From positions 62,001-126,000 of the IMG/VR virus record IMGVR_UViG_3300049855_000348: a DNA stretch of 64,000 nucleotides; one strand, given 5' to 3'. A program made the position numbers and the translations under genes. Shown in pieces: positions 5,420 through 62,167 of this stretch. Below the pieces are notes generated by a model. It did no database searches, was not told where the DNA came from, and worked only from the letters and a program-made list of their open reading frames with translations. Within the stretch, counting starts at the first letter, position 1. Each line of letters begins with the position of its first letter.

Positions 5420-5447
5420 CCTATAGCGACTGATTGATCTAAGTCAA
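5420..5447 (-). promoter_or_regulatory. Repeated sigma70-like promoter, copy 1
   Basis: TTGACT-TAGATCAATCAGTCGC-TATAGG. Confidence 0.75.
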
Positions 5448-5753
5448 CGATCCGGTTTCGTTACTGGTCAATCCGCTTTCGAGATGTCTGATGTTGATCG
5501 ACTCTCTCGACGTGTAGTCGACGCGAACGATCTCCATGCCAGCGGTCGCCTCCAATGGGAGTTGTGTCCTGATGAAGTTCAACAGTGCCTGCATCTGATC
5601 ATACTGGTCATAGCAGATTGGTGGGCTGCGCTTGCTGAGGATCTTCTTGGTGTAGCTTAGCGTCATCCGACCACCGTTCTTGCCGGAGAGCCGGCTGAAC
5701 ACTGAGCAGAGGTAGTCGTTCTTGCTGCCGACGATGCAGTAGCAGGTCATCAT
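5439..5753 (-). CDS. Hypothetical protein with C-terminal GLTxxExG tag
   Basis: ATGA overlap with the 5750 gene; ends ESGLTSNETGSLT. Confidence 0.7.
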   Translation of the reverse strand: MMTCYCIVGSKNDYLCSVFSRLSGKNGGRMTLSYTKKILSKRSPPICYDQYDQMQALLNFIRTQLPLEATAGMEIVRVDYTSRESINIRHLESGLTSNETGSLT

Positions 5754-5980
5754 AGAGTTCCCTTCTCTTCCTGCGTCAGACCAAGGCTCGCTTCGTATTT
5801 CGCCTGTGAGGTCTTGAGCATATCCCAATGGACCTCAGCTTCCTTGATCAGTCGCAGGCAAGTCTTGCAGGTGACCAGTGCTTTGTTGTCAGAAGCACGC
5901 ATGGCGTAAACGCCACAGTACGACTTGCCGGCGTTTGGTCGAGTTCCGTGAACGATGATAATTTTCTTCTGGTCATTCAT
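5750..5980 (-). CDS. Small zinc-finger-like protein with GLTxxExG tag
   Basis: H..CG..VTCKTC motif; ends SLGLTQEEKGTL. Confidence 0.75.
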   Translation of the reverse strand: MNDQKKIIIVHGTRPNAGKSYCGVYAMRASDNKALVTCKTCLRLIKEAEVHWDMLKTSQAKYEASLGLTQEEKGTL

Positions 5981-6192
5981 GCTGGCATTCCGGTCTCGGC
6001 TGAGGTCAATCCACCAGCTTCAATCTCGGCTTCGTAGTCTTCCTGCGAGACTTCACCACGGCACACCGGACAGGTGACCAGCGGCTGCATGGATGCGATC
6101 TTGATCCCCTTCGTGTTGGTCCGCAGACCGCAGGCGGTGGTGTCGTTCCTGAACAGGCCACGGTAGTGCGTGTGATCGAGTGATGGCTTCAC
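5977..6192 (-). CDS. Small zinc-finger-like protein with GLTxxExG tag
   Basis: H..ACG..VTCPVC motif; ends GGLTSAETGMPA. Confidence 0.75.
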   Translation of the reverse strand: MKPSLDHTHYRGLFRNDTTACGLRTNTKGIKIASMQPLVTCPVCRGEVSQEDYEAEIEAGGLTSAETGMPA

Positions 6193-6374
6193 GCTGGCAC
6201 CCCTTGCTCTGCCGTGGTGAGACCGGGCTTCTCTTCTTCACCGAGACGAGCCCAGGCCAAGCACGACGAGCACGTGATCATGCCGATCTCTTTCGTGGTA
6301 CGAACGTCCGGATCGGCGAGTTGTCTTCCACACCCAGTATGATCGGTGAAGATGACATGCCAGTGAATCATCAC
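6189..6374 (-). CDS. Small zinc-finger-like protein with GLTxxExG tag
   Basis: H..GCG..ITCSSC motif; ends PGLTTAEQGVPA. Confidence 0.75.
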   Translation of the reverse strand: MMIHWHVIFTDHTGCGRQLADPDVRTTKEIGMITCSSCLAWARLGEEEKPGLTTAEQGVPA

Positions 6375-6787
6375 GTCGGCCTCCCTTGCTCTTCAGCGGT
6401 GAGACCGGTCGGAGCTTCCTCGTCTGATTCCCTGACCACATTCCCTTCAGCATCGAGCCACACACAGCGGGTAGAAGCCTTGATAACAATCACTCGTTTT
6501 TCAGGCATCTCGAAACCCTGACCAATTCCTTGATTGGCTGGCGGTTTGACTGGTGGCATCGGGATACCACCACTAAGACCACTGGTGGCATCGGTTGTCG
6601 GCTGCACAGCAAAGGACTCTGGTTCCTCACCATCTCGCCAGTCGACATTGGTTCTGAACTTCCACTGCTTCTTCCGGCAGTTCATGCAGATACGAAGATC
6701 GTGATGATCACCCAGAGTGGTTTTCTTACCCACAAAGGGCATCGACCATTTGTGATAGCCTACCCGACATCCGAGTGTTGCGCTCAT
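6371..6787 (-). CDS. Hypothetical protein (C..GxHKW..CxxC N-terminus) with GLTxxExG tag
   Basis: Overlapping start and stop with neighbours; ends TGLTAEEQGRPT. Confidence 0.75.
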   Translation of the reverse strand: MSATLGCRVGYHKWSMPFVGKKTTLGDHHDLRICMNCRKKQWKFRTNVDWRDGEEPESFAVQPTTDATSGLSGGIPMPPVKPPANQGIGQGFEMPEKRVIVIKASTRCVWLDAEGNVVRESDEEAPTGLTAEEQGRPT

Positions 6788-7221
6788 TACGACAGATTCT
6801 CGTAGATCACGAACCGCTTGCCAAGGGCAGCCGCCTCTTCGGCACCGAGGCTGATGAAGAACCGGTATTTCTCGTCGGCGTAGAAATGCGCGTTCAGAGC
6901 ACGCTTCACCCGGTGGAAGTAACCGTCGGCGAGGACCTGCTCCTCAGCCGTGCGCCAGTGCGGCTTGACGCTCGGGACGACATCCTCGATGTCCATGCGG
7001 TTGATGCAGAACACCTTGTAGGGAGTCCGACCCGGCAGGCTGGTCATCTCGATACCAGGGAAGCTCTGGATCTGGATACCGCTGGCCTCGGAGCGCCGGA
7101 TGGCTTCTTCGATGTAGCGGTCCTGGAGTTCCCTGACCGTGTTCTCGTTGAGATCGGCCATCTCCTCCTTCGTGAAGACGGCTTCCCAGGCGTAGTAGAT
7201 CCCGTAAAAGGTCTGGCTCAT
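6787..7221 (-). CDS. Hypothetical protein
   Basis: Start MSQTFY at 7221 overlaps the stop of the upstream gene. Confidence 0.7.
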   Translation of the reverse strand: MSQTFYGIYYAWEAVFTKEEMADLNENTVRELQDRYIEEAIRRSEASGIQIQSFPGIEMTSLPGRTPYKVFCINRMDIEDVVPSVKPHWRTAEEQVLADGYFHRVKRALNAHFYADEKYRFFISLGAEEAAALGKRFVIYENLS

Positions 7222-7490
7222 AGCGGCTTCCCGTATTGGAGGGTGGTGAGGACTGAGGTTTTGATCTGTTCGGGAGTGTATTCGTGGTTGAAGCGGGCTT
7301 GGTAGGTGCCGGCCCGGGCGATCACAGGGTCGCCGTTGGCATCCTTCTTCCACTCGTGATCGACAGGCAAGTCGATCGTCGCGTAGTTGCGATGCAGTTC
7401 GAGGTGCAGCACCTTCACTCCCGGGAAGGTGTCCTTCTCGATCAGGGAGATGACTTCGGCGCGTTTGGAGGCGAGTTTGGCTTTGCTCAT
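7218..7490 (-). CDS. Hypothetical protein, leaderless
   Basis: ATG is 6 nt downstream of TATACT. Confidence 0.75.
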   Translation of the reverse strand: MSKAKLASKRAEVISLIEKDTFPGVKVLHLELHRNYATIDLPVDHEWKKDANGDPVIARAGTYQARFNHEYTPEQIKTSVLTTLQYGKPL

Positions 7491-7496
7491 GCCCAC

Positions 7497-7524
7497 AGTA
7501 TAGCGACCTTTCTGTCTAAGTCAA
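7497..7524 (-). promoter_or_regulatory. Repeated promoter, copy 2
   Basis: TTGACT-TAGACAGAAAGGTCGC-TATACT-GTGGGC-ATG. Confidence 0.85.
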
Positions 7525-7531
7525 CCCTGAA

Positions 7532-7744
7532 TCAGTAGCAGCCGTAGCCGAGCACCTGGACGTGCTGACCGACCAGATCTTCACAGTCAGCCGCGTCATC
7601 GGCCTCTTTCTGGTCGACCAGATGCAGGCATGGCCCGAAGTTGATCGTACGGGGCGAGCCACCACCGTTGAAGCCGTCGAGGATCATCACCTCCTGCTCA
7701 GGATCACAGAGTTCGAGGGCAGCGATGAGTTCTTTGATCTTCAT
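7532..7744 (-). CDS. Small hypothetical protein (MKIKELIAALE..DPEQEV type), leaderless
   Basis: Common phage small-protein N-terminus; ATG 6 nt after the -10. Confidence 0.75.
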   Translation of the reverse strand: MKIKELIAALELCDPEQEVMILDGFNGGGSPRTINFGPCLHLVDQKEADDAADCEDLVGQHVQVLGYGCY

Positions 7745-7750
7745 GTCCAC

Positions 7751-7778
7751 AGTATAGCGATCATTTGGTCTAAGTCAA
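7751..7778 (-). promoter_or_regulatory. Repeated promoter, copy 3
   Basis: TTGACT-TAGACCAAATGATCGC-TATACT-GTGGAC-ATG. Confidence 0.85.
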
Positions 7779-7892
7779 CCTCTACCTCAAAATGGTTTGG
7801 GTGTTGACAGCGCCAAAAGGGTCAATATGCTCCCGGCTCCAAGGGCTAAGACGGTTCCGTTTCACGGAGTAGTCGAGGCAAGCCCAGAGATC

Positions 7893-7921
7893 ACCCTCCA
7901 GCCACACCTGGAGGGTTTTTT
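7893..7921 (+). terminator. Intrinsic terminator
   Basis: CCCTCCAG-ccacac-CTGGAGGG followed by TTTTTT. Confidence 0.75.
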
Positions 7922-7934
7922 CGTTTATAAGTCC

Positions 7935-9199: not shown

Positions 9200-9212
9200 T
9201 CGTGAATTTCGC

Positions 9213-10698: not shown

Positions 10699-10702
10699 CT
10701 GA

Positions 10703-12327: not shown

Positions 12328-12333
12328 TGGATA

Positions 12334-12361
12334 CCCTTAGCGACCTTTTGGTCTAAGTCAA
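12334..12361 (-). promoter_or_regulatory. Repeated promoter, copy 4
   Basis: TTGACT-TAGACCAAAAGGTCGC-TAAGGG-TATCCA-ATG. Confidence 0.75.
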
Positions 12362-15049: not shown

Positions 15050-15055
15050 GCCCAG

Positions 15056-15083
15056 AGTATAGCGACAAAAAGGTCGCCGTCAA
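15056..15083 (-). promoter_or_regulatory. Repeated promoter, copy 5
   Basis: TTGACG-GCGACCTTTTTGTCGC-TATACT-CTGGGC-ATG. Confidence 0.85.
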
Positions 15084-16908: not shown

Positions 16909-16932
16909 GGAAGACTCCAGATTGGGAAGGTC

Positions 16933-16960
16933 GTGTTAGCGACACTGCGGCTGATGTAAA
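16933..16960 (-). promoter_or_regulatory. Repeated promoter, copy 6 (variant)
   Basis: TTTACA-TCAGCCGCAGTGTCGC-TAACAC. Confidence 0.5.
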
Positions 16961-17750: not shown

Positions 17751-18710
17751 TTAGAAAACCTGCTTGCCCAGATCCCCTCCGTTGCCCTGGCTGGCGAAGC
17801 GACCGGCGCGACCCTTCTTCACCGCCTCGGCCTGGGAATCGCTCACCGACAGCGGCTTGCCTTCAGCAGTCCAGATGTCGTTGAAGCACGAGCGCAGAGC
17901 GGTGATCTCGGCCTCATCATCCGAGAAGCGGGTCAGGAACATCGTCCGTGCCGTCTGGAAGGTGTGGACGGCCATGTTCTTGGCCAGATCCAGGAAGGCG
18001 CGGGTCGACACGTCCGAGTGGACGGCCTTGTTCTTCACCGCAGCACGCACCTTGCCGACGAACTGTTCCAGGGCCACCGCATCACGCGGATCGAGCTTGT
18101 CGACCGAGGAGTTGTTGCGCAGCACGGCGATGTCCAGTTCCTGGTGGTAGCCCAACTGGAGTTGGATGGCGAAGCGGTCGCGGAAGGCTTCGTTCATCAC
18201 CCGGACGCCCTCGTAGAAGGGGTTGCCGGCAGCGATCAGGCCGAACTTCTCGTGGGCCACGACGACTTCGGGCTCACCATCAGGACCCGGCTTCTCAGCC
18301 AGGACCAGTTCACGACGGTGGTCGAGCAAACCGTGGATGGCGAACGACACCTCGGGCTTGAGGCTGTTGATCTCGTCGAGCAGACAGACGTGACCGTTGC
18401 GGGCGGCACGGGTCAGGATGCCATCCATCCAGACGTAGCCGACACCGGAGGGGTTGGGGATCCACTGGCCGATCAGGGCTTCACTGGTCGCACCCGTGTG
18501 GCAGGGGATGTAGCAGTATTGCTGATTGAGGCGCAGAGCCACGTCAGCAGCCAGACTCGACTTGCCGGTGCCACGGGGTCCGAGGAGCAGACAGTTCTGC
18601 TTGTTGCGGATGGCGTCGCAGAGGATGTCCACGTCGGTCTTGTCGTGGTACTTGCGGGCGATGTAGGTCGAAACGGCGGGTGCCGGCTTGGTTGCTGTTT
18701 TCGTGGTCAT
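17751..18710 (-). CDS. MoxR/CbbQ/CobS-family AAA+ ATPase
   Basis: Walker A GPRGTGKS, Walker B LLDEIN, sensor AAGNP.YEG, MNEAFRDRF, STR. Confidence 0.92.
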   Translation of the reverse strand: MTTKTATKPAPAVSTYIARKYHDKTDVDILCDAIRNKQNCLLLGPRGTGKSSLAADVALRLNQQYCYIPCHTGATSEALIGQWIPNPSGVGYVWMDGILTRAARNGHVCLLDEINSLKPEVSFAIHGLLDHRRELVLAEKPGPDGEPEVVVAHEKFGLIAAGNPFYEGVRVMNEAFRDRFAIQLQLGYHQELDIAVLRNNSSVDKLDPRDAVALEQFVGKVRAAVKNKAVHSDVSTRAFLDLAKNMAVHTFQTARTMFLTRFSDDEAEITALRSCFNDIWTAEGKPLSVSDSQAEAVKKGRAGRFASQGNGGDLGKQVF

Positions 18711-18743
18711 GGTTGCTATGCTCCGTGCTTGGTTGATGCGCAG

Positions 18744-18771
18744 AGTATAGCGACCAATTGGTCTATGTCAA
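18744..18771 (-). promoter_or_regulatory. Repeated promoter, copy 7
   Basis: TTGACA-TAGACCAATTGGTCGC-TATACT, containing a perfect GACCAATTGGTC palindrome. Confidence 0.85.
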
Positions 18772-23088: not shown

Positions 23089-23094
23089 GCCAAC

Positions 23095-23122
23095 AATATA
23101 GCGACCATTTAGTCTAAGTCAA
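23095..23122 (-). promoter_or_regulatory. Repeated promoter, copy 8
   Basis: TTGACT-TAGACTAAATGGTCGC-TATATT-GTTGGC-ATG. Confidence 0.85.
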
Positions 23123-23461: not shown

Positions 23462-23837
23462 TGGTGGACGCGCCCGGAATCGAACCGGGGTCCAAGAGAT
23501 CTTCTTTCTGTGTGCTCTACCAAGAATATGAGGTGTTTCTGTCCTCCAACCTAGTTGGTCTTTTCTCGATGACCTACACTCGTCTGCGTTGTTCTTTCGT
23601 GCCTTACCCGCAGCGGGAAAGCCCTAGCGTCCGGCCTATGGTACCAGGGTGCGACCGGCGACGGCCCTGGGGTTGTTGGTGCAGCGTCTAGCTGCCTGAT
23701 TGCTCAGGCGGCGAGTGCGATGCGACCGTACTCGACGTGATCGTCGGGTATTTTTTTACGGGTTTTTTAGGTGGACTCCCGCACCACCTCTTGGCTCACC
23801 CTGATGTCTGTTCTCCTGTCGAGACCTGTTCGCGCCC
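23462..23837 (-). ncRNA. ssrA: tmRNA (one-piece), tag (A)DDHVEYGRIALAA
   Basis: Acceptor stem GGGCGCG/CGCGTCC with G3-U70 and encoded ACCA; T-arm CCCGG-TTCGATT-CCGGG; pk1 AGGTGG/CCACCT plus TGCGGG/CCCGTA; tag ORF at 23704-23745. Confidence 0.95.
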
Positions 23838-24195: not shown

Positions 24196-24200
24196 CGATA

Positions 24201-24228
24201 TTTATAGCGACCATTTGGTCTATGTCAA
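24201..24228 (-). promoter_or_regulatory. Repeated promoter, copy 9 (drives the ncRNA cluster)
   Basis: TTGACA-TAGACCAAATGGTCGC-TATAAA. Confidence 0.85.
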
Positions 24229-25988
24229 ACAATTTGTGGAACGCCGGCTTCTGCGAGTCGTGATTTTCCGATCGTCCTGACCTTGATGCCCAGTGTACCG
24301 AGAAACGGCATCAGGTGACGGTAGTTGCGCACGATCTTCGGGAAGTTCTGGTCGATCTCTGAAACCTTGGTCTCTTTGTAGAATCGTGGCTGCTGTGGTG
24401 AGTAGTCATGACCACAACCAGCGAGCAGGATGTCCTTGGCTCCAGCCCACACAGCGACCTGAATGGCCACCCAGACGATCGAGTAACCATGGAAGATGCC
24501 ACGGGTGAGGTCGGAGCAGAAACCCTCATGGCCGATGGTCTTGATGTACGAAGCATCGCAGTTGCCAGGAAGGAATGGACGAACCACCGAGTTGTAGATC
24601 TTCAGACCACACGCCTTGATGGCGATCTCTTTCTTCTCTGGAACATCGAGGAAACGCTTGTCGCCGATGCAATACACATCGAACGGGATACCGAGTTTCA
24701 TCGCAGCGTTGGTGCCGATGTTCTTGGCGTTTGGGTAGAGTCCAACCGCTTCAAGTGCTGTTGGTCCATTTCCCCAGATCACCACCTGCTGATCTTTCCA
24801 TTGCCCGAACAGTTCAAGCACGGCGGGCTGGATCTTCTCCGGCACGAGGTACGGAGAGGCGAGACGCTGGAAACCTCCCCACTGACGGAAATAGGTTTTC
24901 TCTTTCACTGGTGGAGTGATGGGACTCTGACCGGTGGTGACTTGCTCATAAACATCGGTGAAGTGTCTGACCAGTCGATTGGGATTCCAGTTGTTCTCCA
25001 TCCACGAACGACCGTCAATTTTCAACTTCTCCACCAGATCTGGATTGGCGGCGAGATTGCGCAGTGTGGCTTCGAGTTCGTGCTGCTGCGTGTTCACCCA
25101 TGGCAGGGTGGTGTCGTATCCAACGATCTGACGGATGGCATCCTTCGTCTGATCATCAATCCAGCCGATGGTGACCAGACCCTGGCTGAGAGCTTCCAAC
25201 GAACAGAGATGGTAGCCACCAGTGACGCACTCGTCGATGCAGACATCGTGCTGTTGTTTGATGGGCATCAACTCTTCCCAACGCTTGTCGGTGATGAGTG
25301 TGTACTCGATGAGCCCTTCGGCCTGCAATTTCTTCAGGACAGCGTTGACGGTGGAATAGCCCTTGCCGCAGCAGGTGTTGGTGTAGATGGCGTAGGACTT
25401 CAGATCGCTTGGTGTGTAGATGACCTTCAGTTTGCTGTGCTTCGCCAGCATCGGCATCAGGCGTGTGTCGTAGATGTCGATCATGTTCGGAACTGGCGTG
25501 CTCTTGGGATAGAAGCGAACATGCTTCTGAGCGATGACCAGCGTGCGAATGTCATCACGATTCACCACATCACGCTTATAAGCCTTCTGGAGGAGTGATG
25601 GTTCGGTGTGGTACTGGAGGACTTTGTATTTCTCCCGCAGCAAGTGCTTGAACGGAGCCATCTCAGGCGATTCGTGATCCACCCAGTTGTGAAAGTGAAT
25701 CACATCAGCCTTGCTGATGAGGTGCTTCACTTCGTGGACTTGATGCAGGAAGACATCGTGCTGAAACTTCCGACCGTTGGTGGTGTCACTGGCGGTGACC
25801 GTCCGGCAGGTGTGTGACGTGTACTTGTTGATGGCGTCATGGATGCGCCAGATCGCCCCGGCACAGTTGGTCCGAGAGATCTGAAGGATCAGTTTTCCTT
25901 CCGCCTTGTTGATTGCCGGGGCGGCGTTCTGCAACTCGGGAAAGGATGAGTTATCCATCGGGATCAGTTCGACTGGGTAGTTGGTCAT
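24225..25988 (-). CDS. Two-domain glycosyltransferase (GT-B-like plus DUF115/MAF-like domain)
   Basis: KGY and GYHLCSLEALSQG (GT-B); C-terminal IWGNGP..IGTN..AIQVAVWAGAKDILLAGC. Confidence 0.75.
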   Translation of the reverse strand: MTNYPVELIPMDNSSFPELQNAAPAINKAEGKLILQISRTNCAGAIWRIHDAINKYTSHTCRTVTASDTTNGRKFQHDVFLHQVHEVKHLISKADVIHFHNWVDHESPEMAPFKHLLREKYKVLQYHTEPSLLQKAYKRDVVNRDDIRTLVIAQKHVRFYPKSTPVPNMIDIYDTRLMPMLAKHSKLKVIYTPSDLKSYAIYTNTCCGKGYSTVNAVLKKLQAEGLIEYTLITDKRWEELMPIKQQHDVCIDECVTGGYHLCSLEALSQGLVTIGWIDDQTKDAIRQIVGYDTTLPWVNTQQHELEATLRNLAANPDLVEKLKIDGRSWMENNWNPNRLVRHFTDVYEQVTTGQSPITPPVKEKTYFRQWGGFQRLASPYLVPEKIQPAVLELFGQWKDQQVVIWGNGPTALEAVGLYPNAKNIGTNAAMKLGIPFDVYCIGDKRFLDVPEKKEIAIKACGLKIYNSVVRPFLPGNCDASYIKTIGHEGFCSDLTRGIFHGYSIVWVAIQVAVWAGAKDILLAGCGHDYSPQQPRFYKETKVSEIDQNFPKIVRNYRHLMPFLGTLGIKVRTIGKSRLAEAGVPQIV

Positions 25989-31611: not shown

Positions 31612-31617
31612 GCCCGA

Positions 31618-31645
31618 AGTATAGCGATCAATTTGTCTAAGTCAA
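31618..31645 (-). promoter_or_regulatory. Repeated promoter, copy 10
   Basis: TTGACT-TAGACAAATTGATCGC-TATACT-TCGGGC-ATG. Confidence 0.85.
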
Positions 31646-33956: not shown

Positions 33957-34163
33957 CTAACCCTTGTCGCCCTGTTTGGCGTCCTTCTCTTTGATCTCGG
34001 CGATCTCGGCGGTGGTTGGCTGTTCGATGTCCTTGATCAGGTAGTCATGGAGCATGCGAATGCCCCGTCGAACCTGATCCGACTTTCCGAGCCTGAACTT
34101 CTTGCTGATCTCCAGCAATTTTTCGTTGTCCTCATCCGTGATGAGGAAGCTGATCTTCGGCAT
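33957..34163 (-). CDS. Ribbon-helix-helix DNA-binding protein
   Basis: KISFLITDEDNEKLLEISKKFRLGKSDQVRRGI; GGAGG SD. Confidence 0.7.
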   Translation of the reverse strand: MPKISFLITDEDNEKLLEISKKFRLGKSDQVRRGIRMLHDYLIKDIEQPTTAEIAEIKEKDAKQGDKG

Positions 34164-34660: not shown

Positions 34661-35776
34661 TCAAACCTTGGGAACCGGCAGGGCCGCAGCCTGCTGGAGG
34701 ATCCACTTCACCGCACCACCCGACACGTTCTTGCCGGCGATGATGTCTTCGATCACCTTGCTCCAGCCGTAGTTGCCGGTGGCCTGGAGACGCTTGGCGA
34801 GCGCCAGGACCTCGTCGCTGGCCTTGCCGACAGTCGTGGTGTCCTGCGGGGGCGGGACGCGGCTGGCGAGGCTGTGGACGACCACCGGCTTGGGAGCAGC
34901 GGGTGCCGGCTGGGGCGTGGCAGCAGCCAGAGCAGCGGCTTCCGCCTTCTTGCGTGCCTCTTCCTCGGCGGCGAACCGCTGCTGGAGGAGGTTGATCACC
35001 TCGTTGATCGGCACACCGGCAGTGCGGTGATCCGAGCACCACTTCAGGAACTTGGGGATACGGCGAGCCTGCTGATCGTTCTTCACCACGTGGCGGTAGT
35101 AGCCTTCGCGCACACGGTAGCTGCGATCGAAGACACCGCTTTCGCAGTCAGCCAGCCACTTCTCATCGACACCGTTGGCCGAATCGAGGCGGCGGACAGT
35201 CTCCTGCCACAGGCGGCGGTAGGGGTTGCTGCCCGAGGCCAGGAGATCGCGGTGCTCGTAGAGACCAGGGAAGTCACGCTTGAAGTCGTTGACCTTCTCC
35301 ATCGTGCGGCGGAACTTCTCGGAGCGGGTGCGTTCAGCCTTCACCGCTTCGATCATGGCTTCCGCAGCCGGCAAGCCGAGGTTGCGCACGATCTCACCGA
35401 AGCAGTCCGTACCCGACCAGCCGAGGTAGGCACCCTTCAGCGTGCGGTAGAACACGCACCAGTTGTGATGAGCATTGCAGAGGCTGCACTGAGCCGCCCG
35501 CTTGCCGTTCACCGTGGGGGAGACCGCCAGAGCGTACTCGAACTCACCGAGTTCGGCGACGGTGTTCACCAGGGTGTTGCGCTTGTCGAAACGATCACGC
35601 TTGTCGGTGATGATCGAGTTGTCCTTGAGGACCGTCACTTTGCGCCACGTCAGCGGCTGACCGTAGGTTTCGACATTGCCGAGACCCGGTACCTCCGTGA
35701 GGACCACACCGCGCTCAACCTGTCGGAGGTTGCTGCCGGTGGTGGGGGAGAAGGGGATGTTGGAATTGAAGGCCAT
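34661..35776 (-). CDS. Hypothetical protein with CSLC..H zinc motif
   Basis: AGGAG SD; strongly biased codon usage; follows promoter copy 11. Confidence 0.8.
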   Translation of the reverse strand: MAFNSNIPFSPTTGSNLRQVERGVVLTEVPGLGNVETYGQPLTWRKVTVLKDNSIITDKRDRFDKRNTLVNTVAELGEFEYALAVSPTVNGKRAAQCSLCNAHHNWCVFYRTLKGAYLGWSGTDCFGEIVRNLGLPAAEAMIEAVKAERTRSEKFRRTMEKVNDFKRDFPGLYEHRDLLASGSNPYRRLWQETVRRLDSANGVDEKWLADCESGVFDRSYRVREGYYRHVVKNDQQARRIPKFLKWCSDHRTAGVPINEVINLLQQRFAAEEEARKKAEAAALAAATPQPAPAAPKPVVVHSLASRVPPPQDTTTVGKASDEVLALAKRLQATGNYGWSKVIEDIIAGKNVSGGAVKWILQQAAALPVPKV

Positions 35777-35806
35777 GGTGAATACTCCTGCTTTGCTTGT
35801 GCGTGG

Positions 35807-35834
35807 AGTATAGCGACACTTTGGCTGATGTCAA
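35807..35834 (-). promoter_or_regulatory. Repeated promoter, copy 11
   Basis: TTGACA-TCAGCCAAAGTGTCGC-TATACT. Confidence 0.8.
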
Positions 35835-44090: not shown

Positions 44091-46310
44091 TCACATGCTC
44101 ACGACGGTACGTTCGGTTTCCGTAGCTTCCCCTGGGGAACCAACCACTCGAATCCGCTGGATGTAGCGTCGGAATGTGGGAACAAATTGGAAAGGAAGGC
44201 CAAGATAGGCTTCCAACTGAACTACCAGGGAACCCTTGACCGTACGTTCGGCATCGCCGTTTTCGACGTTGTGACTGTAGGAACGCAGCCAGAGAGGGAA
44301 GATTTCCTGGGGAACCGGCTGTGCGCCGACGAAATCAAGGGGATAGGCCATCTTCAGGTAGGAGAGGCCACCGTGGTGGTGGAAACGCTGAAGGATGGTA
44401 CCGATGGAGTAACGAAGGTCCTCCTCGAACTCGGCATAGACCTCGACAGCATAGGTCAGCTTCCAAGGAGAAGGCTTCGAGAAACGTGCGGCCCGGCGAG
44501 CCTGTTCCCGAGGTCCATCGTACAGCACACCAACGTAGGATTCTGGTGGGTGGTAGCGGTCACCGTTGTATTCCACCTGCTGAAGACGCAGCGTCACTAC
44601 CGGCTGTTTGGCACGCTCGTTACGCGCATCATCACCCTTCAGAGCTTTGATGGCGCGGATCGCCTTCTCACCACCGGCATACTCGACGCGGAATTCCAGG
44701 GAATGGCTATCATCGCGGGGTGTTTTGATCGTCCGGAACCAGTCAACAAAGGCTTTCTCATACGACAAGAAAGCCGGGATGAAGGGAATCACCTTCTCGT
44801 ATTGTTGAATGGCTGCCATAGCTTCTTCGTCCTCTTCTATGTAGACAGCCTCGGCGATCACAACAGGCGCAGAAATCTTGATCGAAGGGAAACTTACGCT
44901 GGTTGAGGCTGTGCCGGTTGCCGTGCCGGTTGGTGGTGTGACGGTGATGGTGCCGATGTCGCCGTTGCCATGAACGGTGACCAACACGTCGACCGTCGGA
45001 GCGTCCAAGACGACGGTTGCCAGAGATCCGGAGGTATTGGCCGAACCGGTTCCCTGTGCATCAATTGCAACAATTTGAACGGTACCGATGAGTGATGTCG
45101 CCGATGCCCCAGCCGTGGTGTCGGCTGTGGGTGCGGTGACGTTCACCGTGCTCAGGTTGCCAGAGGCGTTTGCAGAGCCTGTGGCGGACGATGTCGGTGC
45201 CGAGGTGGTGATGGTACCAATCGAGACCGAAACGGTCACGCCGGCACTGACAGTGGCCGTTGGGGCGATGACGACGACTGCCGGCAGCGAGGCGGTTCCT
45301 GTACCGTTGCCGGTGCCGGTCACCGTCGGTGAGGTAACCGTTACGGTGCTCAGGTTTCCAGAAGCAACGACGCTGACACTGCCCTGTGCCGTCGGAGCCG
45401 ACACGTTGACGGTGTTGAGGTTGCCGTTTACCGAAGCGGCACCAGTCGCCGATGCCGTCGGAGCGGTGACGGTGACCGTCGATAGCGAAGCAGAGGCAGT
45501 CGCTTTTCCGGTCGCCGATGCCGTCGGTGCGGTGACAGTGACCGTACCAATATCACCCGATGCACTGCCGGTTCCAGTTGTCGACGCCGATGCCGTCGGA
45601 GCGGTGACGGTGACCGTACCGATCGAGGTGTCAGTGTTTGCTGCACCAGTGGCTGAGGCAGTTGGCGTCGAAACGGTGACCGTGCTGATCGAGGCACTGA
45701 CATTCGCAGTGCCCGTCGCCGAAGCGGTCGGAGCCGAGACGGTGACGGTGTTGATTGAGGCATCGACAGCAGCAGCACCCGTCGCCGAAGCGGTTGGCGC
45801 GGTGACAGTGATGGTACCAATCGAAACGTCGACAGCAGTAGATCCAGCAGCCGAGGCGGTCGGGGTCGAGAGAGTGACGGTGCCAATCGAGGCATCAACG
45901 TTTGCGGTACCGGTCGCCGAAGCTGTTGGAGCCGTGACAGTGACGGTACTGATTGAGACATCAGCGATAGCAGATCCAGCAGCCGAAGCTGTTGGTGCGG
46001 TGACGGTGACCGTGCTGATCGAGGTATTGACATTCGCAGCACCGGTCGCCGAGGCTGTTGGAGCCGAGACGGTGACCGTGCTGATCGAAGTATCGACGTT
46101 CGCTGCACCGGTTGCTGAAGCGGTTGGTGCGGTGACGGTGACCGTACCAATCGAAGTATTGACAGCGGCAGATCCAGTCGCCGAAACAGTTGGTGCAGAA
46201 ACTACTACGGTACCGATATTACCAGATGCAACAGCGTCGGTACTGCCACTTCCGAAGAAGTTGCTGGCGAAGTGGTCGCTACCGAAGTGATTCCCATTCA
46301 GATAGCCCAT
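44091..46310 (-). CDS. Thr/Ala/Ser/Val repeat protein fused to a gp15-like tail-terminator domain
   Basis: About 20 x 22-aa repeats (SIGTVTVTAPTASATGAA..); C-terminal P..W.L.Y...VYA...DL.....IL.RF. Confidence 0.65.
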   Translation of the reverse strand: MGYLNGNHFGSDHFASNFFGSGSTDAVASGNIGTVVVSAPTVSATGSAAVNTSIGTVTVTAPTASATGAANVDTSISTVTVSAPTASATGAANVNTSISTVTVTAPTASAAGSAIADVSISTVTVTAPTASATGTANVDASIGTVTLSTPTASAAGSTAVDVSIGTITVTAPTASATGAAAVDASINTVTVSAPTASATGTANVSASISTVTVSTPTASATGAANTDTSIGTVTVTAPTASASTTGTGSASGDIGTVTVTAPTASATGKATASASLSTVTVTAPTASATGAASVNGNLNTVNVSAPTAQGSVSVVASGNLSTVTVTSPTVTGTGNGTGTASLPAVVVIAPTATVSAGVTVSVSIGTITTSAPTSSATGSANASGNLSTVNVTAPTADTTAGASATSLIGTVQIVAIDAQGTGSANTSGSLATVVLDAPTVDVLVTVHGNGDIGTITVTPPTGTATGTASTSVSFPSIKISAPVVIAEAVYIEEDEEAMAAIQQYEKVIPFIPAFLSYEKAFVDWFRTIKTPRDDSHSLEFRVEYAGGEKAIRAIKALKGDDARNERAKQPVVTLRLQQVEYNGDRYHPPESYVGVLYDGPREQARRAARFSKPSPWKLTYAVEVYAEFEEDLRYSIGTILQRFHHHGGLSYLKMAYPLDFVGAQPVPQEIFPLWLRSYSHNVENGDAERTVKGSLVVQLEAYLGLPFQFVPTFRRYIQRIRVVGSPGEATETERTVVSM

Positions 46311-55607: not shown

Positions 55608-55613
55608 GCCCAG

Positions 55614-55641
55614 AGTATAGCGACCAAAAGGTCTATGTCAA
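55614..55641 (-). promoter_or_regulatory. Repeated promoter, copy 12
   Basis: TTGACA-TAGACCTTTTGGTCGC-TATACT-CTGGGC-ATG. Confidence 0.85.
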
Positions 55642-56183
55642 CCTGAAAGGAGACCCTTCACGTGTCCAACAACAGACTCCACCTTCGATGGCCTGAAGAG
55701 GCCATCTGCCTCATTAGCATTCCACGGCAAAGGGAAGAGTAACGACAGACCACCGTGTTGTTTGAACTTACGGCAGTTGAGCGGATGATCATCGATCAGG
55801 ATGTCACCCGGACGGGCAAGGTACTCCTTTTTACAAGTGAAGATCCAGTCCTCGAACTCCAGACCGAAGCGATCATGGAGCCACAAGAGCTTACCCTTGC
55901 AGGCATCGGATGACCAGCTTGGGTTGGTCAGGATGGTAACATTGTCGATCTCCTTCAATCCGTTGTAGAGGTCCATCGCCCACGGGTAGGGCTTGAGATT
56001 CCTCCACCATGCTGACCCACCACAGTTGATCAGATCCCACATCTGTTGATGAGTCATGCCGAGGCACTTCCAGATGTCCCACTGATCAAGGTCATCATGG
56101 GTGACACCGATCGTGCTGGGAAGTAAATCGAGGAACCCCTGGTTGAAGTTCACCAGGGGGCCGTCCATGTCGAGGTAGATCAT
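55638..56183 (-). CDS. HAD-family 5'(3')-deoxyribonucleotidase (NT5C-like)
   Basis: IYLDMDG.L..F, GK..WL, LIDD..N. Confidence 0.88.
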   Translation of the reverse strand: MIYLDMDGPLVNFNQGFLDLLPSTIGVTHDDLDQWDIWKCLGMTHQQMWDLINCGGSAWWRNLKPYPWAMDLYNGLKEIDNVTILTNPSWSSDACKGKLLWLHDRFGLEFEDWIFTCKKEYLARPGDILIDDHPLNCRKFKQHGGLSLLFPLPWNANEADGLFRPSKVESVVGHVKGLLSG

Positions 56184-56362
56184 GCCTTGGAGAGCTTGAC
56201 CACGATGCGACCGAGGCGCTTGTGCCCGGCCTTGGTGAAGTGCTTCTCCCACCACTTGCCGACATCCTTGGCGGTCCAGGTGGAGAAGTTCTTGGCGATC
56301 TCAGCTTCAGCCTGTGCGGCTGCTTCGTCCATCTGGCTGGTTGGTCCACCGTCTTCGGTCAT
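56180..56362 (-). CDS. Small hypothetical protein
   Basis: ATGA overlaps at both ends. Confidence 0.65.
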   Translation of the reverse strand: MTEDGGPTSQMDEAAAQAEAEIAKNFSTWTAKDVGKWWEKHFTKAGHKRLGRIVVKLSKA

Positions 56363-57039: not shown

Positions 57040-57047
57040 GGAATCTT

Positions 57048-58123: not shown

Positions 58124-58418
58124 CGAGTGTTCCTTTGCATACAGCACGGAGACGAACGCCGGCATCTTTCCACGAACACATCTCATCGGTCCACTGACCA
58201 AGCGAGATCAGCGTGGCAATGGTCTTCGACAGCGGATGCTTCGGACAGACCTTGATGTGCTCCTTCAGAACTTCAGCCATGGTTGGTGGCGTGTTGTCCT
58301 TCGGACCATAGCGGTGACCGCAGTAGACGCAGTTGATGAACATCCCCGACTGGAGATCAGAGATCCACAGCTTGAGCTTTTCATTCTCGGCGAGGAGTTC
58401 GTCAAGCTGGCTGGACAT
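58113..58418 (-). CDS. Small zinc-binding protein
   Basis: CVYCGH..L.EHI..CPKHP. Confidence 0.7.
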   Translation of the reverse strand: MSSQLDELLAENEKLKLWISDLQSGMFINCVYCGHRYGPKDNTPPTMAEVLKEHIKVCPKHPLSKTIATLISLGQWTDEMCSWKDAGVRLRAVCKGTLDGI

Positions 58419-60780: not shown

Positions 60781-61064
60781 TGTGGCTTTCCTAACTTGGT
60801 GATTTGTTGACGACTCTTCTTCAGCTTCTTGCTCAGGCGTTTGATCCGTTCCTGCATGAGCAGATTATCGAGACGGCGATAGTCCGGCACAAACAGATCC
60901 AATTGCAGGCAGATGAACTTCACCATCAGGTGATTGTCATTCTCTTGAGCATCCTTCTGAAGCTCTCTGATCTTCTTGGACAACTCACGATGAAGCCGGA
61001 TATCGAGACACCAGTTCCTGACTGCTTTGCGGAAGAAATATCGACGAATCCAGTCTTCTAACAT
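60777..61064 (-). CDS. Hypothetical protein
   Basis: Follows promoter copy 13. Confidence 0.65.
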   Translation of the reverse strand: MLEDWIRRYFFRKAVRNWCLDIRLHRELSKKIRELQKDAQENDNHLMVKFICLQLDLFVPDYRRLDNLLMQERIKRLSKKLKKSRQQITKLGKPQ

Positions 61065-61085
61065 TGTGATCCCTTTAGGCGTTTG

Positions 61086-61113
61086 AAAGTAGCGACTGAA
61101 TTATCGCTGTCAA
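61086..61113 (-). promoter_or_regulatory. Repeated promoter, copy 13
   Basis: TTGACA-GCGATAATTCAGTCGC-TACTTT. Confidence 0.7.
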
Positions 61114-61583
61114 TGCCAAGGATCAGGGTACTGCATCGGCGGCACTGGCAATGCCGCATCTGGCATCCAATGCTTCAATATCACGATGGCAGTAGCCACA
61201 CTCTTCGTGACGAAATCAACTTCCCGGGTAGTTTCAGTTTTGTAGAGCCACCACCGCTTGCCGGCTGTCTGCGGTCGGAAGCCCTTCTGCTGCATCATGG
61301 TCTTCGATGATTGCAGACCCAGATACGTGGATTCCCGGAGGATGGCATCCTGTTGTGCCTTGTGCCATTCCTGCACGAACTTGTCCAACTCCTCCAGGAA
61401 CTTCCGGGCACCATTCTTCGGATCGTCGCCGGTCACCACGGTACGCTGACCATTGGAGCGTAGCCAGTCGACCAGACGCCATTCCAACACATCCTGTTTC
61501 CAGGACAACACGAGGTGCCCGGTGGGTTCCTTCTGGCAGCCTTGGCCGTGAAAGCGGAAGCGGACCAGCGGGAGATCGGGCAT
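61110..61583 (-). CDS. Hypothetical protein
   Basis: 157 aa; stop codon lies inside the -35 box of copy 13. Confidence 0.7.
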   Translation of the reverse strand: MPDLPLVRFRFHGQGCQKEPTGHLVLSWKQDVLEWRLVDWLRSNGQRTVVTGDDPKNGARKFLEELDKFVQEWHKAQQDAILRESTYLGLQSSKTMMQQKGFRPQTAGKRWWLYKTETTREVDFVTKSVATAIVILKHWMPDAALPVPPMQYPDPWH

Positions 61584-61588
61584 GGGAC

Positions 61589-62167
61589 TCAGGGGTTGTT
61601 GAACAGCCTCACTTGGATACCGAAGTCAGGCCGTTCGGCGATGGTGGCAGCATCATCGTCATACCACTCGCCCTTGCCGAAGACTTCAGCCAGGACATCG
61701 CGGTTCAAACGTAATGAGTACCACAGCAGGATGGGCGCTTTCGGTTTAGCGACACGTTTGACTATGTCAAGCAAACGACGCTGGTCCTCTTCGACGAGAT
61801 GTTCGAGGACGTTGATCGAGGCGACCACGTCGAAGGAGGCGGTCTGAAGGTCGTCAGAGACGTTGGTATAGAACAGATTGGGCTGTGGGACCGCACACTC
61901 CTTGCGGGCCAATTCAACGCACTCGATCACCGGGTCGTAGCCGACCACGGTTCTGAAGTAGCCGGCCAGCGGACGGGCGATGCGACCGGTACCACAGCCG
62001 TACTCCAGGAGTGTCATCGATGGGCTGATAGAGGCACCGGCGTGAAGCCTGCGGATGCACTCCATGGCGACAATCGCCCCATGCGTGGCATAGGCGATGT
62101 CGTCGTTTTGGTACTTGTTTGCGATCGTCTTCCGAGGCGAGCGCCAGTGGTCTTGAGTGAACGGCAT
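61589..62167 (-). CDS. Class I SAM-dependent methyltransferase
   Basis: LLEYGCGTGRIA, VVGYD, FDVV...VLEHL. Confidence 0.9.
   Translation of the reverse strand: MPFTQDHWRSPRKTIANKYQNDDIAYATHGAIVAMECIRRLHAGASISPSMTLLEYGCGTGRIARPLAGYFRTVVGYDPVIECVELARKECAVPQPNLFYTNVSDDLQTASFDVVASINVLEHLVEEDQRRLLDIVKRVAKPKAPILLWYSLRLNRDVLAEVFGKGEWYDDDAATIAERPDFGIQVRLFNNP
61743..61770 (-). promoter_or_regulatory. Repeated promoter, copy 14 (intragenic)
   Basis: TTGACA-TAGTCAAACGTGTCGC-TAAACC inside the methyltransferase CDS. Confidence 0.6.

What the first reader, a model, noticed from the sequence alone, without database searches (positions are those of the whole stretch)
5420..61770. Fourteen-copy promoter with palindromic spacer and leaderless starts
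Seen in sequence: minus-strand consensus TTGAC(A/T)-TAGACC-N4-GGTCGC-TA(T)ACT, with a fixed 16-nt spacer, at 5420, 7497, 7751, 12334, 15056, 16933, 18744, 23095, 24201, 31618, 35807, 55614, 61086 and 61743. In seven copies the ATG is exactly 6 nt after the -10, which implies leaderless mRNA. Spacer conservation, including a GACC-N4-GGTC dyad, exceeds what sigma70 needs and suggests an operator or activator site. The RHH protein at 33957-34163 is one candidate binder. In four copies (15080, 24225, 55638, 61110) the TGA inside TTGAC is also the upstream gene's stop codon. Conserved GCTA with a variable last -10 base recalls alphaproteobacterial promoters, a weak host hint only.
Basis: partly seen in the sequence, partly recalled or inferred. 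Interest (0 to 1): 0.6.

Follow-up and report, generated by a model that had tools for sequence, protein, structure and literature searches.

The report
Phage-wide leaderless promoter with embedded dyad
An uncultured 220-kb freshwater phage drives its non-structural genes from about 37 near-identical host-type promoters, most of them placed so that the mRNA should start at the ATG itself; all carry a small two-fold symmetric element between the -35 and -10 boxes that related phages have kept, which points to one factor controlling the whole set.

Summary
Thirteen of the 14 listed sites are real family members; 16933 is degenerate. A fifteenth copy lies on the plus strand at 7804-7833. The complete 220,489-bp phage genome holds 37 strong copies, against 0 in shuffles. 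Consensus: TTGAC(T/A)-(TAGACC|GCGACC)-AAAW-GGTCGC-TATACT-nTGGGC-ATG, with a fixed 16-nt spacer.

All copies point the same way as the genes after them, and none lies in the structural block. In 22 of 37 an ATG sits at the 7th nt after the -10 and opens the gene. These 5' ends are unusually unstructured.

The spacer core GAC-N6-GTC next to GCTA is kept at matching sites in five related metagenomic lineages (GC 47-68%), even where the -35 drifts to TTGCAT. More distant relatives have plain sigma70-like promoters, mostly with leaders and Shine-Dalgarno sites.

The genome has no sigma70-consensus promoter without the element, and no copies of the dyad away from promoters.

Best reading: these are host-sigma promoters of early or pre-replicative genes that make leaderless mRNAs, with an embedded operator for a dimeric regulator. 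The binder is unidentified. The ORF at 33957-34163 has only lead-level ribbon-helix-helix (RHH) support. No transcription start site (TSS) data exist.

Verdict: new variant of a known kind.

The parts
5418..5447 (-). Promoter copy, TTGACT-16-TATAGG. The ATG at +6 opens only 15 codons. The 160-aa gene 4884-5366 starts 53 nt after the -10, so this copy is leadered.
7495..7524 (-). Promoter copy. ATG (7490-7488) at the 7th nt after the -10 opens a 90-aa ORF. Predicted leaderless.
7749..7778 (-). Promoter copy. ATG (7744-7742) at +7 opens a 70-aa ORF. Predicted leaderless.
7804..7833 (+). It is followed by a structured 88-nt leader or small RNA that ends in a terminator hairpin (7838-7925).
12332..12361 (-). 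Promoter copy with -10 TAAGGG. ATG (12327) at +7 opens a 382-aa ORF. Predicted leaderless.
15054..15083 (-). Promoter copy with left arm GCGACC. ATG (15049) at +7 opens a 641-aa ORF. Predicted leaderless. Orthologous promoters are present in L012, L014 and L017.
16931..16960 (-). Doubtful or degenerate copy (TTTACA...GTCGC-TAACAC), 7.7 bits. A 24-nt leader precedes a 97-aa ORF.
18742..18771 (-). Promoter copy, the best-scoring one. A at +1 (ATC), then a 33-nt leader to the AAA_5 MoxR-like ATPase gene 17751-18710. Leadered.
23093..23122 (-). Promoter copy. ATG (23088) at +7 opens an 88-aa ORF. Predicted leaderless.
24199..24228 (-). Promoter copy. No ORF of 45 aa or more starts within 80 nt after the -10. 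The tmRNA gene (23462-23837) starts about 357 nt downstream. The TGA inside TTGAC is the stop codon of the 587-aa ORF 24225-25988.
31616..31645 (-). Promoter copy. ATG (31611) at +7 opens a 140-aa ORF. Predicted leaderless. An orthologous leaderless copy is present in L020.
35805..35834 (-). Promoter copy. A 30-nt leader with AGGAG precedes the 371-aa ORF 34661-35776. This operon also holds the RHH-like ORF. An orthologous leadered copy is present in L020.
55612..55641 (-). Promoter copy with centre TTTT. ATG (55607) at +7 opens a 196-aa ORF. Predicted leaderless. The TGA inside TTGAC is the stop codon of ORF 55638-56255.
61084..61113 (-). Weaker copy (24-26 bits, -10 TACTTT). A 21-nt leader precedes a 95-aa ORF. 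The TGA inside TTGAC is the stop codon of ORF 61110-61583.
61741..61770 (-). Weaker copy (28 bits, -10 TAAACC) inside ORF 61589-62167, with no adjacent start codon. Function uncertain.
33957..34163 (-). 68-aa ORF, a lead-level ribbon-helix-helix candidate and the third gene of the operon behind promoter 35805-35834. Its DNA target is untested.

Best explanation
The window is part of a complete, uncultured 220-kb myovirus from freshwater sediment. It has a T4-type capsid, portal, sheath and baseplate genes, a DnaE-type polymerase, 33 tRNAs and a tmRNA.

The repeat is this phage's single class of host-primary-sigma (sigma70-type) promoters. There are about 37 copies. Each has TTGAC at -34..-30, a fixed 16-nt spacer, a GCTA-led -10 (TATACT) and C(-1)A(+1) placed 7 nt after the -10. 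They head operons of ORFan, replication, repair and nucleotide genes, and probably the tmRNA, but not the structural genes. That makes them most likely early or pre-replicative promoters.

In 22 copies the +1 A is the A of the ATG. These transcripts should be leaderless and translated by 5'-AUG recognition, without a Shine-Dalgarno site.

Inside the spacer sits a two-fold symmetric element. Its core is GAC-N6-GTC, it reaches AGCGACC-N4-GGTCGCT in some copies, and its centre is A/T-rich in either orientation. It is centred near -20.5. I infer that it is the operator of a dimeric DNA-binding factor that acts on the whole class at once. The most likely role is a phage-made repressor that blocks RNA polymerase between the -35 and -10 boxes and shuts early transcription off.

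What is shown: the motif, its copy number and orientation, the ATG geometry, the low 5' structure, the conservation across relatives, and the absence of plain sigma70 promoters and of stand-alone dyads.

What is inferred: the transcription start site, dependence on the host sigma factor, the timing, the operator function and the identity of the binder.
For: Motif statistics
- 37 copies of at least 25 bits, against 0 in shuffles.
- Every TTGAC-N15-GCTA in the genome (37) belongs to the family; 0.7 are expected by chance.
- Only 2 TTGAC-N17-19-TAnnnT sites lie outside the family, against 8 expected.

Genomic placement
- All copies point the same way as the genes after them, and none lies in the 124-161 kb structural block.

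Leaderless geometry
- ATG at +7 in 22 of 37 copies. Leadered copies keep C(-1)A(+1) at the same place.
- The first 45 nt of the 22 predicted leaderless mRNAs fold at -3.7 kcal/mol. Other gene starts fold at -6.5 (p=2e-5) and internal ATG windows at -10.0 (p=2e-12). This matches the start-codon accessibility determinant reported in PMC8459731.
- About 45% of all called genes carry a Shine-Dalgarno-like motif 9-14 nt upstream of the start.

Conservation in relatives
- L014, L012/L020, L023, L018 and L017 (ATPase 56-76% identical; GC 0.47-0.68) carry the element at matching sites. Across 21 sites from four of these lineages (L023 not counted), GAC is kept in 19-20, GTC in 18-20 and GCTA in 19-21, while the -35 drifts to TTGCAT.
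- Five of the six dyad-bearing lineages form a supported group in the ATPase tree.
- The ortholog of the 641-aa gene is leaderless in the dyad lineages L012, L014 and L017 and also in dyad-less L013, and has a leader plus Shine-Dalgarno site in L015, L016 and L019.

Dyad properties
- The centre is AAAA or TTTT, so it does not depend on orientation.
- The arms do not covary at -23/-18, so it is not a hairpin.
- L018 has arms CTAC/GTAG, including one perfect AGCTAC-N6-GTAGCT.

No phage sigma factor or known transcription factor
- No Sigma70_r2 match in six frames.
- No HTH, RHH or sigma family at E<=1e-3 among 218 proteins of 300 aa or fewer.
Against: - There is no transcription start site or expression data. 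The only RNA run held a single 211-nt contig away from any promoter.
- No binder is identified. The RHH-like ORF and a sigma-region-4-like ORF are both below family thresholds.
- The commonest left arm is TAGACC, not the symmetric GCGACC, so the consensus site is an imperfect dyad. The right arm overlaps positions (-14 G, GCTA) that RNA polymerase itself may read.
- Dyad-less relatives also show some similarity between their spacers (L013, L019). Part of the within-genome uniformity could therefore come from homogenisation of promoter copies.
- Sites in relatives were mostly found with the window's own matrix, which biases them toward similarity.
- The host is unknown.
Confidence: 0.6

Rival explanations
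1. The spacer is read by RNA polymerase itself. The host primary sigma or core enzyme prefers G-14 C-13 (GCTA) and further spacer contacts. The phage has converged on one optimal strong promoter, and the apparent dyad is a by-product.
For: - GCTA matches the Caulobacter sigma73 -10 consensus GCtANAWC (PMC13004042).
- GCTA also occurs in dyad-less relative L013.
- The right arm overlaps the extended -10 region.
- The left-arm consensus TAGACC is not symmetric with GGTCGC.
- No dyad occurs outside promoters.
Against: - GAC-N6-GTC is lineage-specific, while GCTA is more widespread.
- The centre accepts AAAA or TTTT.
- L018 shows the same substitution in both arms (CTAC/GTAG).
- The GAC arm stays fixed where the -35 hexamer itself drifts.
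- From my own knowledge, no known sigma70 contact explains G-26 A-25 C-24 or G-17 T-16 C-15.
Confidence: 0.22
2. These are middle-type promoters that need a phage-made activator or sigma-remodelling factor bound at -28..-13. The candidate would be the sigma-region-4-like ORF at genome 175267-175635, or an ORFan. They would not be early promoters subject to a repressor.
For: - The element lies where T4 MotA boxes lie (own knowledge).
- A sigma-r4-like HTH lead exists: PF04545 at 12.8 bits and Atlas score 0.90.
- In L012/L020 the -35 is weak (TTGCAT) while the element is intact.
Against: - The genome has no other sigma70-like promoter class that could express such an activator first.
- -35 TTGAC is invariant in all 37 copies.
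- No MotA or AsiA family hits.
- The 16-nt spacer rules out a MerR-type mechanism.
Confidence: 0.12
3. The uniformity is historical. The promoter, together with its first codons, spread and is homogenised by recombination between copies, like the mobile promoter cassettes of T4-type phages. The spacer sequence would then have no function of its own.
For: - Conservation extends from about -43 to +8, and several N-termini resemble each other (MSN.., MSK..).
- In strain-level relatives the assemblies break at the copies. One copy carries the other arm variant, TTGACAGC instead of TTGACTTAGAC.
- Other lineages have their own spacer similarities.
Against: - The same core persists in lineages whose ATPase is only 56-76% identical and whose GC differs by 20 points.
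- Non-core spacer positions (-23, -19, -18) vary freely within the genome.
- Flanks beyond -43 carry no information.
Confidence: 0.06

Closest known systems
Bacterial primary-sigma promoters: E. coli sigma70 TTGACA-17-TATAAT; Caulobacter sigma73 TTGaCg / GCtANAWC (PMC13004042)
   Same: Both have -35 TTGAC, -10 TAnnnT with T-12 and A-11 invariant, a spacer within 16-18 nt and a pyrimidine-purine start 7 nt after the -10. The GC before TA matches the Caulobacter consensus.
   Different: The spacer is fixed at 16 nt and carries about 10 further conserved positions that form a dyad. The copies are near-identical across a whole genome.
Leaderless gene expression with the -10 adjacent to the ORF: Deinococcus-Thermus (PMC12340547), Thermus phage phiYS40 (Sevostyanova et al. 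2007, cited there; its details are from my own knowledge), Caulobacter (PMC4117421, PMC8459731), lambda cI from PRM
   Same: A -10 element sits at a fixed short distance before the ATG. The start codon is AUG, there is no Shine-Dalgarno site and the 5' end is unstructured.
   Different: Here a full -35/-10 promoter with a conserved spacer is used, in a T4-like jumbo phage. phiKZ showed no leaderless transcript (PMC8244752) and the 5' UTRs of AR9 are 26-491 nt (PMC5312081).
P22 Arc repressor at Pant: a ribbon-helix-helix protein whose operator lies between -35 and -10 (own knowledge)
   Same: A small symmetric operator sits inside a promoter spacer, and a small phage RHH protein is the proposed binder.
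   Different: Arc controls one promoter pair in the immunity region of a temperate phage. Here about 37 promoters would be controlled, and binding is untested.
Multi-copy repressor sites spread over phage genomes: mycobacteriophage L5 stoperators and phiC31 conserved inverted repeats (own knowledge)
   Same: Tens of copies of one short protein-binding site are distributed genome-wide in one orientation relative to transcription.
   Different: Those sites serve lysogeny repressors of temperate phages, and many lie outside promoters. Here the element occurs only inside promoters of an apparently lytic jumbo phage.
T4 early promoters and promoter-early stem-loop (PeSL) cassettes of T4-type phages (own knowledge)
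   Same: It is a T4-type phage with many extended-consensus early promoters heading small ORFan genes.
   Different: There is no stem-loop: the arms do not covary and the stem would be only 4 bp. The consensus is different, and most copies are leaderless.

Membership tests
sigma70-type (primary sigma) promoter | A -35 hexamer resembling TTGACA | tested here: met
   TTGAC is invariant in 37 of 37 copies. The independent scan gives 10-11 matches of 12.
sigma70-type (primary sigma) promoter | A -10 TAnnnT with a 16-18 nt spacer | tested here: met
   T-12 and A-11 in 37 of 37 copies, T-7 in 31 of 37, spacer 16 nt in all.
sigma70-type (primary sigma) promoter | Transcription starts about 7 nt after the -10 and depends on host holoenzyme | not testable with these tools
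   The only RNA run gave one contig away from any promoter. The host is unknown.
leaderless mRNA gene | The start codon is at the predicted 5' end and is AUG | tested here: met
   ATG at the 7th nt after the -10 in 22 of 37 copies, all ATG. The 5' end is predicted, not mapped.
leaderless mRNA gene | No Shine-Dalgarno site and an accessible 5' end | tested here: met
   The upstream bases are the promoter itself. MFE is -3.7 against -6.5 and -10.0 kcal/mol for the controls.
operator of a dimeric DNA-binding regulator | Two-fold symmetric half-sites one helical turn apart, conserved in relatives | tested here: met
   GAC-N6-GTC with up to 7+7 bp arms. It is kept in five related lineages.
operator of a dimeric DNA-binding regulator | A cognate binding protein | tested here: inconclusive
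   No Pfam DNA-binding family at E<=1e-3 in 218 small proteins. There are two sub-threshold leads.
ribbon-helix-helix family (ORF 33957-34163) | A match to an RHH family model above its curated cut-off | tested here: not met
   RHH_3 scores 15.8 bits against a cut-off of 21.6. RHH_1 gives no match.
ribbon-helix-helix family (ORF 33957-34163) | A strand-helix-helix fold that dimerises | tested here: inconclusive
   The AF2 monomer has pLDDT 61, helices at 10-22 and 29-47, and an unstructured N-terminus. Foldseek found nothing. The Atlas look-alikes are all RHH (score 0.92, TM about 0.6), which is lead level.
T4 MotA-dependent middle promoter | A MotA box replaces the -35, and MotA and AsiA genes are present | tested here: not met
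   -35 TTGAC is invariant. The Pfam sweep shows no MotA or AsiA families.
MerR-type spacer-binding activation | An over-long 19-20 bp spacer | tested here: not met
   The spacer is 16 nt in all copies.
PeSL-type promoter plus stem-loop cassette | A stable stem-loop attached to the promoter | tested here: not met
   The arms show no compensatory variation at -23/-18, and the common stem would be 4 bp.

The most novel reading that the evidence does not exclude
One small operator built into every early promoter lets a single phage protein, possibly the RHH-like ORF that one of these promoters itself expresses, switch off the whole pre-replicative programme of a jumbo phage. The leaderless design, together with the phage's own tmRNA, release-factor-like protein and 33 tRNAs, would be part of a strategy that favours phage mRNAs by shifting the host toward 70S or leaderless initiation.
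Probability: 0.2. Interest if true: 0.75.

Novelty: new variant of a known kind. Interest (0 to 1): 0.55.

Why it matters
If the geometry holds, this clade of uncultured freshwater jumbo phages expresses most of its early genes from leaderless mRNAs. The two giant phages with mapped 5' ends do not do this: phiKZ showed no leaderless transcript, and the 5' UTRs of AR9 are 26-491 nt.

The arrangement gives a compact, portable module of promoter plus start codon in about 45 bp. It also offers a clear case for asking what a conserved promoter spacer is for.

Because every sigma70-type promoter in the genome carries the same dyad, a single gel-shift or footprint experiment could uncover a genome-wide early switch. 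The promoter's GCTA and leaderless signature could also narrow the search for the unknown host.

Tried and rejected
Searches that found nothing
- Megablast and blastn of two window stretches against the phage collection: no match.
- tblastn with the tail sheath: only distant hits, 41% identity or less.
- IMG/VR scans with the sheath, with the exact 19-base motif, and with an ATPase alignment: no close relative.
- Genome-contig scan with the L014 ATPase: nothing.
- Metagenome scan with the RHH alignment: nothing.
- Metagenome scan with the ATPase alignment: only three useful short loci.
- Whole-record searches of the relatives' contigs were not possible, and relatives cannot be drawn for a virus record.

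Read and contig mapping
- The RNA run held one 211-nt contig at 12885-12999 and beyond, which gives no information on the transcription start site (TSS). DNA contigs of strain-level relatives break at the promoter copies.

The RHH-like ORF
- Pfam at E<=0.01: nothing.
- PDB sequence profile: nothing meaningful.
- Foldseek against the PDB on a pLDDT-61 monomer model: no match.
- Homodimer prediction: no verdict, so it counts neither for nor against.

Ideas considered and rejected
- A DNA or RNA hairpin in the spacer: rejected, because the arms do not covary.
- Stand-alone operators elsewhere in the genome: none beyond chance.
- A phage sigma factor: no Sigma70_r2 match, and only a 12.8-bit r4-like match.
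- HTH_3 and RHH_1 in six frames: none.
- Host inference from the tmRNA: it is the ordinary one-piece type (RF00023), which does not support the alphaproteobacterial hint and does not name a host.
- Rfam on the plus-strand leader: only sub-threshold terminator-like hits.

Limits of my own methods
- The gene calls come from a home-made codon-usage caller. It missed at least two genes.

Full report
**What the window is**

The window is bases 62001-126000 of a single 220,489-bp record with GC 0.56. IMG/VR classes the record as a complete virus with direct terminal repeats. The same sequence is present in full in a freshwater sediment metagenome.

Gene content:
- T4-type major capsid protein (Gp23 family), portal, large terminase, tail sheath and baseplate proteins.
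- A DnaE-type DNA polymerase III alpha, a DnaB-like helicase, and RecA-like and SbcCD-like proteins.
- 33 tRNA genes and a full-length tmRNA.

No deposited phage is close to it. It is therefore an uncultured jumbo myovirus, and its host is unknown.

**Check of the observation**

The motif is real. A pattern search with up to three mismatches gives 11 sites in the window and none in 100 shuffles. A 30-nt weight matrix trained on the copies gives 37 sites of at least 25 bits in the whole genome and none in shuffled genomes.

Of the 14 listed sites:
- Eleven score 33-47 bits.
- 61086 and 61743 are weaker, at 24-28 bits, and have poor -10 boxes.
- 16933 scores 7.7 bits and should not be counted.

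An independent sigma70 consensus scan ranks family members as its six best hits between 5001 and 25000, all with a 16-nt spacer.

The consensus over 37 copies is:
(a..tag.tG) TTGAC(T/A) (T/G)(A/C)GAC c AAA n g GTCGC TATAcT n t g g g C ATG

TTGAC, C-15, G-14, C-13, T-12 and A-11 are invariant. G-26, A-25, C-24, G-17 and T-16 are nearly so.

The seven copies with ATG exactly 6 nt after the -10 are confirmed. The four cases where the TGA inside TTGAC is the stop of the upstream ORF fit the ORF coordinates.

**Where the copies lie**

Every strong copy points the same way as the genes after it. They head units of one to about ten genes on both strands. None lies in the 124-161 kb block that holds the capsid, portal, terminase and a 3,989-aa protein. 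None stands directly in front of the sheath and baseplate genes either.

The genes behind them are mostly ORFans. Those with a recognisable function are:
- an AAA_5 MoxR-like ATPase;
- an SbcCD-like nuclease;
- an HD-domain hydrolase;
- a unit that contains a helicase.

One copy sits about 357 nt upstream of the tmRNA, with no long ORF starting within 80 nt of the -10. This distribution suits early or pre-replicative promoters. The timing is an inference.

**Leaderless geometry**

In 22 of 37 copies an ATG starts at the 7th nt after the -10 hexamer and opens the downstream ORF of 57 to 1,163 codons. From base composition, about 0.5 such cases would be expected.

The remaining copies:
- One has ATG at the 8th nt, one at the 10th, and one has GTG at the 7th.
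- Eight have leaders of 21-53 nt, several followed by a purine-rich Shine-Dalgarno-like stretch before the ATG.
- The remaining four are a tandem upstream copy, the copy upstream of the tmRNA, and two uncertain ones.

The leadered copies keep C at -1 and A at +1 at the same distance (for example CTGCGC-ATC and CCACGC-ACA). This supports that position as the start point.

The first 45 nt of the 22 predicted leaderless mRNAs fold much less stably than controls. Their mean MFE is -3.7 kcal/mol. Other gene starts average -6.5 (p=2e-5) and internal ATG windows -10.0 (p=2e-12). [quoted passage not shown] About 45% of all called genes carry a Shine-Dalgarno-like motif 9-14 nt upstream of the start. 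The phage therefore mixes the two modes.

**Relatives**

Homologs of the ATPase gave a graded series of metagenomic contigs. The sequence around the ATPase gene was fetched for most of them.

| Lineage | ATPase identity | GC | Promoter type |
|---|---|---|---|
| L014 | 76% | 0.55 | dyad family |
| L012/L020 | 75% | 0.63-0.64 | dyad family, -35 drifted to TTGCAT |
| L023 | 67% | 0.47 | dyad family (right arm TTCGC) |
| L018 | 62% | 0.57 | dyad family, arms CTAC/GTAG |
| L017 | 56% | 0.68 | dyad family |
| L013/L021 | 57% | 0.53-0.54 | no dyad; TTGACA-spacer-GCTA kept |
| L025 | 54% | 0.63 | no dyad |
| L019/L024 | 53% | 0.56-0.57 | no dyad |
| L015 | 53% | 0.59 | no dyad; own repeat |
| L016 | 50% | 0.48 | no dyad |

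The five dyad lineages carry the element at matching places, for example upstream of the ATPase and of the ortholog of the 641-aa gene. Across 21 sites from four of these lineages (L023 not counted):
- GAC (-26..-24) is kept in 19-20 sites.
- GTC (-17..-15) is kept in 18-20.
- GC-TA is kept in 19-21.
- The C of TTGAC is kept in only 12.

In L012/L020 the -35 has become TTGCAT while TAGAC...GTCGCTA is intact. L018 has arms CTAC/GTAG, including one perfect AGCTAC-N6-GTAGCT.

The more distant relatives have TTGACA-16/17-TAnnnT promoters with other spacers, mostly with leaders and Shine-Dalgarno sites.

The ortholog of the 641-aa gene is leaderless in L012, L014, L017 and L013, and has a leader plus Shine-Dalgarno site in L015, L016 and L019. 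The orthologs of promoters 31616 (leaderless) and 35805 (leadered) keep their state in L020.

In the ATPase tree, five dyad-bearing lineages form a supported group (91/93). L017 is unresolved at the base, so a single origin is not excluded.

One caveat: most sites in relatives were found with the window's own matrix, which favours similar sites. The sites at matching gene positions are free of that bias.

**What the spacer element is**

Several observations bear on this.
- Every TTGAC-N15-GCTA in the genome is a family member (37 found, 0.7 expected).
- Only two TTGAC-N17-19-TAnnnT sites lie outside the family (8 expected).
- GAC-N6-GTCGC is not enriched outside promoters (15 found, 17.5 expected).

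The element is therefore part of the phage's only sigma70-like promoter class and does not occur on its own.

The arms do not covary at -23/-18, and the common stem would be only 4 bp, so a hairpin is unlikely. The four central bases are A/T-rich in either orientation: AAAA, AAAT or TTTT. The arm core lies one helical turn apart (9 bp centre to centre), centred near -20.5. These are the usual marks of a site for a dimeric protein.

GCTA is shared with dyad-less L013 and matches the Caulobacter sigma73 -10 consensus GCtANAWC (PMC13004042). It is better explained by RNA polymerase preference. GAC...GTC is specific to the lineage.

I conclude, as an inference, that a dimeric factor binds between the -35 and -10 boxes. 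Because such a position normally blocks the polymerase, it most likely acts as a class-wide repressor.

Points against this reading:
- The commonest left arm (TAGACC) is not the symmetric one.
- The right arm overlaps positions that the polymerase may read.
- Dyad-less relatives also show some similarity between their spacers.

**Candidate binders**

A Pfam sweep of 218 predicted proteins of 300 aa or fewer found no HTH, RHH or sigma family at E<=1e-3. Six-frame searches found no Sigma70_r2, HTH_3 or RHH_1.

- It gets the only RHH_3 match in the genome, but at 15.8 bits against a cut-off of 21.6.
- Atlas look-alikes by features (0.92) and by structure (TM about 0.6) are all ribbon-helix-helix families, which is lead level.
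- The AF2 monomer model is poor (pLDDT 61), with helices at 10-22 and 29-47. Foldseek found nothing.
- It has seven close homologs and a 47%-identical syntenic ortholog in L020 with the N-terminal MPKI(S/T)F(L/I)I conserved.
- It is the third gene of the operon behind promoter copy 35805-35834. That position would suit delayed self-shut-off.

A second lead is a sigma-region-4-like ORF at genome 175267-175635 (PF04545 12.8 bits; Atlas 0.90).

Neither ORF is shown to bind DNA.

**Comparison with known systems**

The promoter works like a primary-sigma promoter and passes the sequence tests for one.

The -10-next-to-ATG arrangement is known from Deinococcus-Thermus (PMC12340547), from Caulobacter (PMC4117421) and, from my own knowledge, from Thermus phage phiYS40 and lambda PRM. 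Among giant phages with mapped 5' ends, phiKZ showed no leaderless transcript (PMC8244752) and AR9 has 26-491-nt UTRs (PMC5312081).

An operator inside the spacer bound by a small phage RHH protein is known from P22 Arc at Pant. Genome-wide repressor sites are known from L5 and phiC31. These three comparisons rest on my own knowledge.

The combination is new as a variant, not as a kind: one promoter class, about 37 copies, mostly leaderless, each carrying the same dyad, conserved across a phage clade.

**Limits**

- There are no transcription start site data.
- The host is unknown.
- Gene calls come from a home-made caller that missed at least two genes.
- The operator function and its binder are inferred.
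- The homodimer prediction gave no verdict and is not used.

Noticed in passing
window 23462-23837 (-): A full-length one-piece tmRNA gene (Rfam RF00023, 97 bits; tag DDHVEYGRIALAA) is encoded by the phage. It lies about 357 nt downstream of promoter copy 24199-24228.
   Followed up: partly
genome 18491-23006 (+) and 39879-40769 (-), outside the window (L001-L003): There are 33 tRNA genes in two arrays. The small proteins also include an RF-1/PCRF (release-factor-like) protein and a RelA_SpoT-domain hit. Together with the tmRNA this is a sizeable translation toolkit.
   Followed up: no
window 7804-7925 (+); L012:18570-18745 (-): The plus-strand family-type promoter is followed by an 88-nt strongly structured RNA (MFE -37.6 kcal/mol, z -5.2) that ends in a terminator hairpin, with an ATG about 15 nt later. 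The arrangement is kept in relative L012 with compensatory changes in the stem. It could be a small RNA or an attenuator leader. There is no Rfam match.
   Followed up: partly
genome-wide; in the window at about 19734 (+), 40731 (-), 41464 (-) and 44056 (-): A second motif, (G/C)CTAGATA(A/G)G(C)C, lies directly before start codons. All 11 matches to TAGATA[AG][AG]C lie within 33 nt upstream of a same-strand gene start. These include the tail sheath and other structural genes, and the ATG or GTG often follows only 4-5 nt after TAGATA. TAGATA-type boxes also precede orthologous genes in distant relatives. It may be a late or -35-less promoter class, or a stop-start junction signal.
   Followed up: partly
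genome 175267-175635 (-) = L008:7267-7635: A 122-aa ORF that my gene caller missed has a C-terminal sigma70-region-4-like helix-turn-helix (PF04545 12.8 bits, Atlas 0.90). It lies between a 257-aa gene and the DnaB-like helicase.
   Followed up: partly
genome 44164-44757 (-) = L003:12164-12757: An HD_4-domain (SpoT-like hydrolase) gene lies behind promoter copy 44765-44794, with its ATG at the 10th nt after the -10. My gene caller missed it because it overlaps a plus-strand call.
   Followed up: yes
L015:9900-10000 and L015:14090-14180: Distant relative L015 has its own repeated upstream element, TTATAGACTCCGACATTTTTTGTTGA, in place of the dyad promoter before two orthologous genes.
   Followed up: no
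window 7480-7525, 7747-7782, 12338-12361 (read laying): Contigs of strain-level relatives (90-97% identical, two freshwater metagenomes) end at the promoter copies. At copy 7495-7524 one relative carries the TTGACAGC arm variant instead of TTGACTTAGAC. This could be repeat-driven assembly breaks or exchange between copies.
   Followed up: no
contig of P0138 (ENA ERZ1426834, no DNA held): A related phage contig encodes a 566-aa protein with a Cas12f1-like_TNB (TnpB/Cas12f-like) domain next to the conserved Nlig-Ia gene.
   Followed up: no
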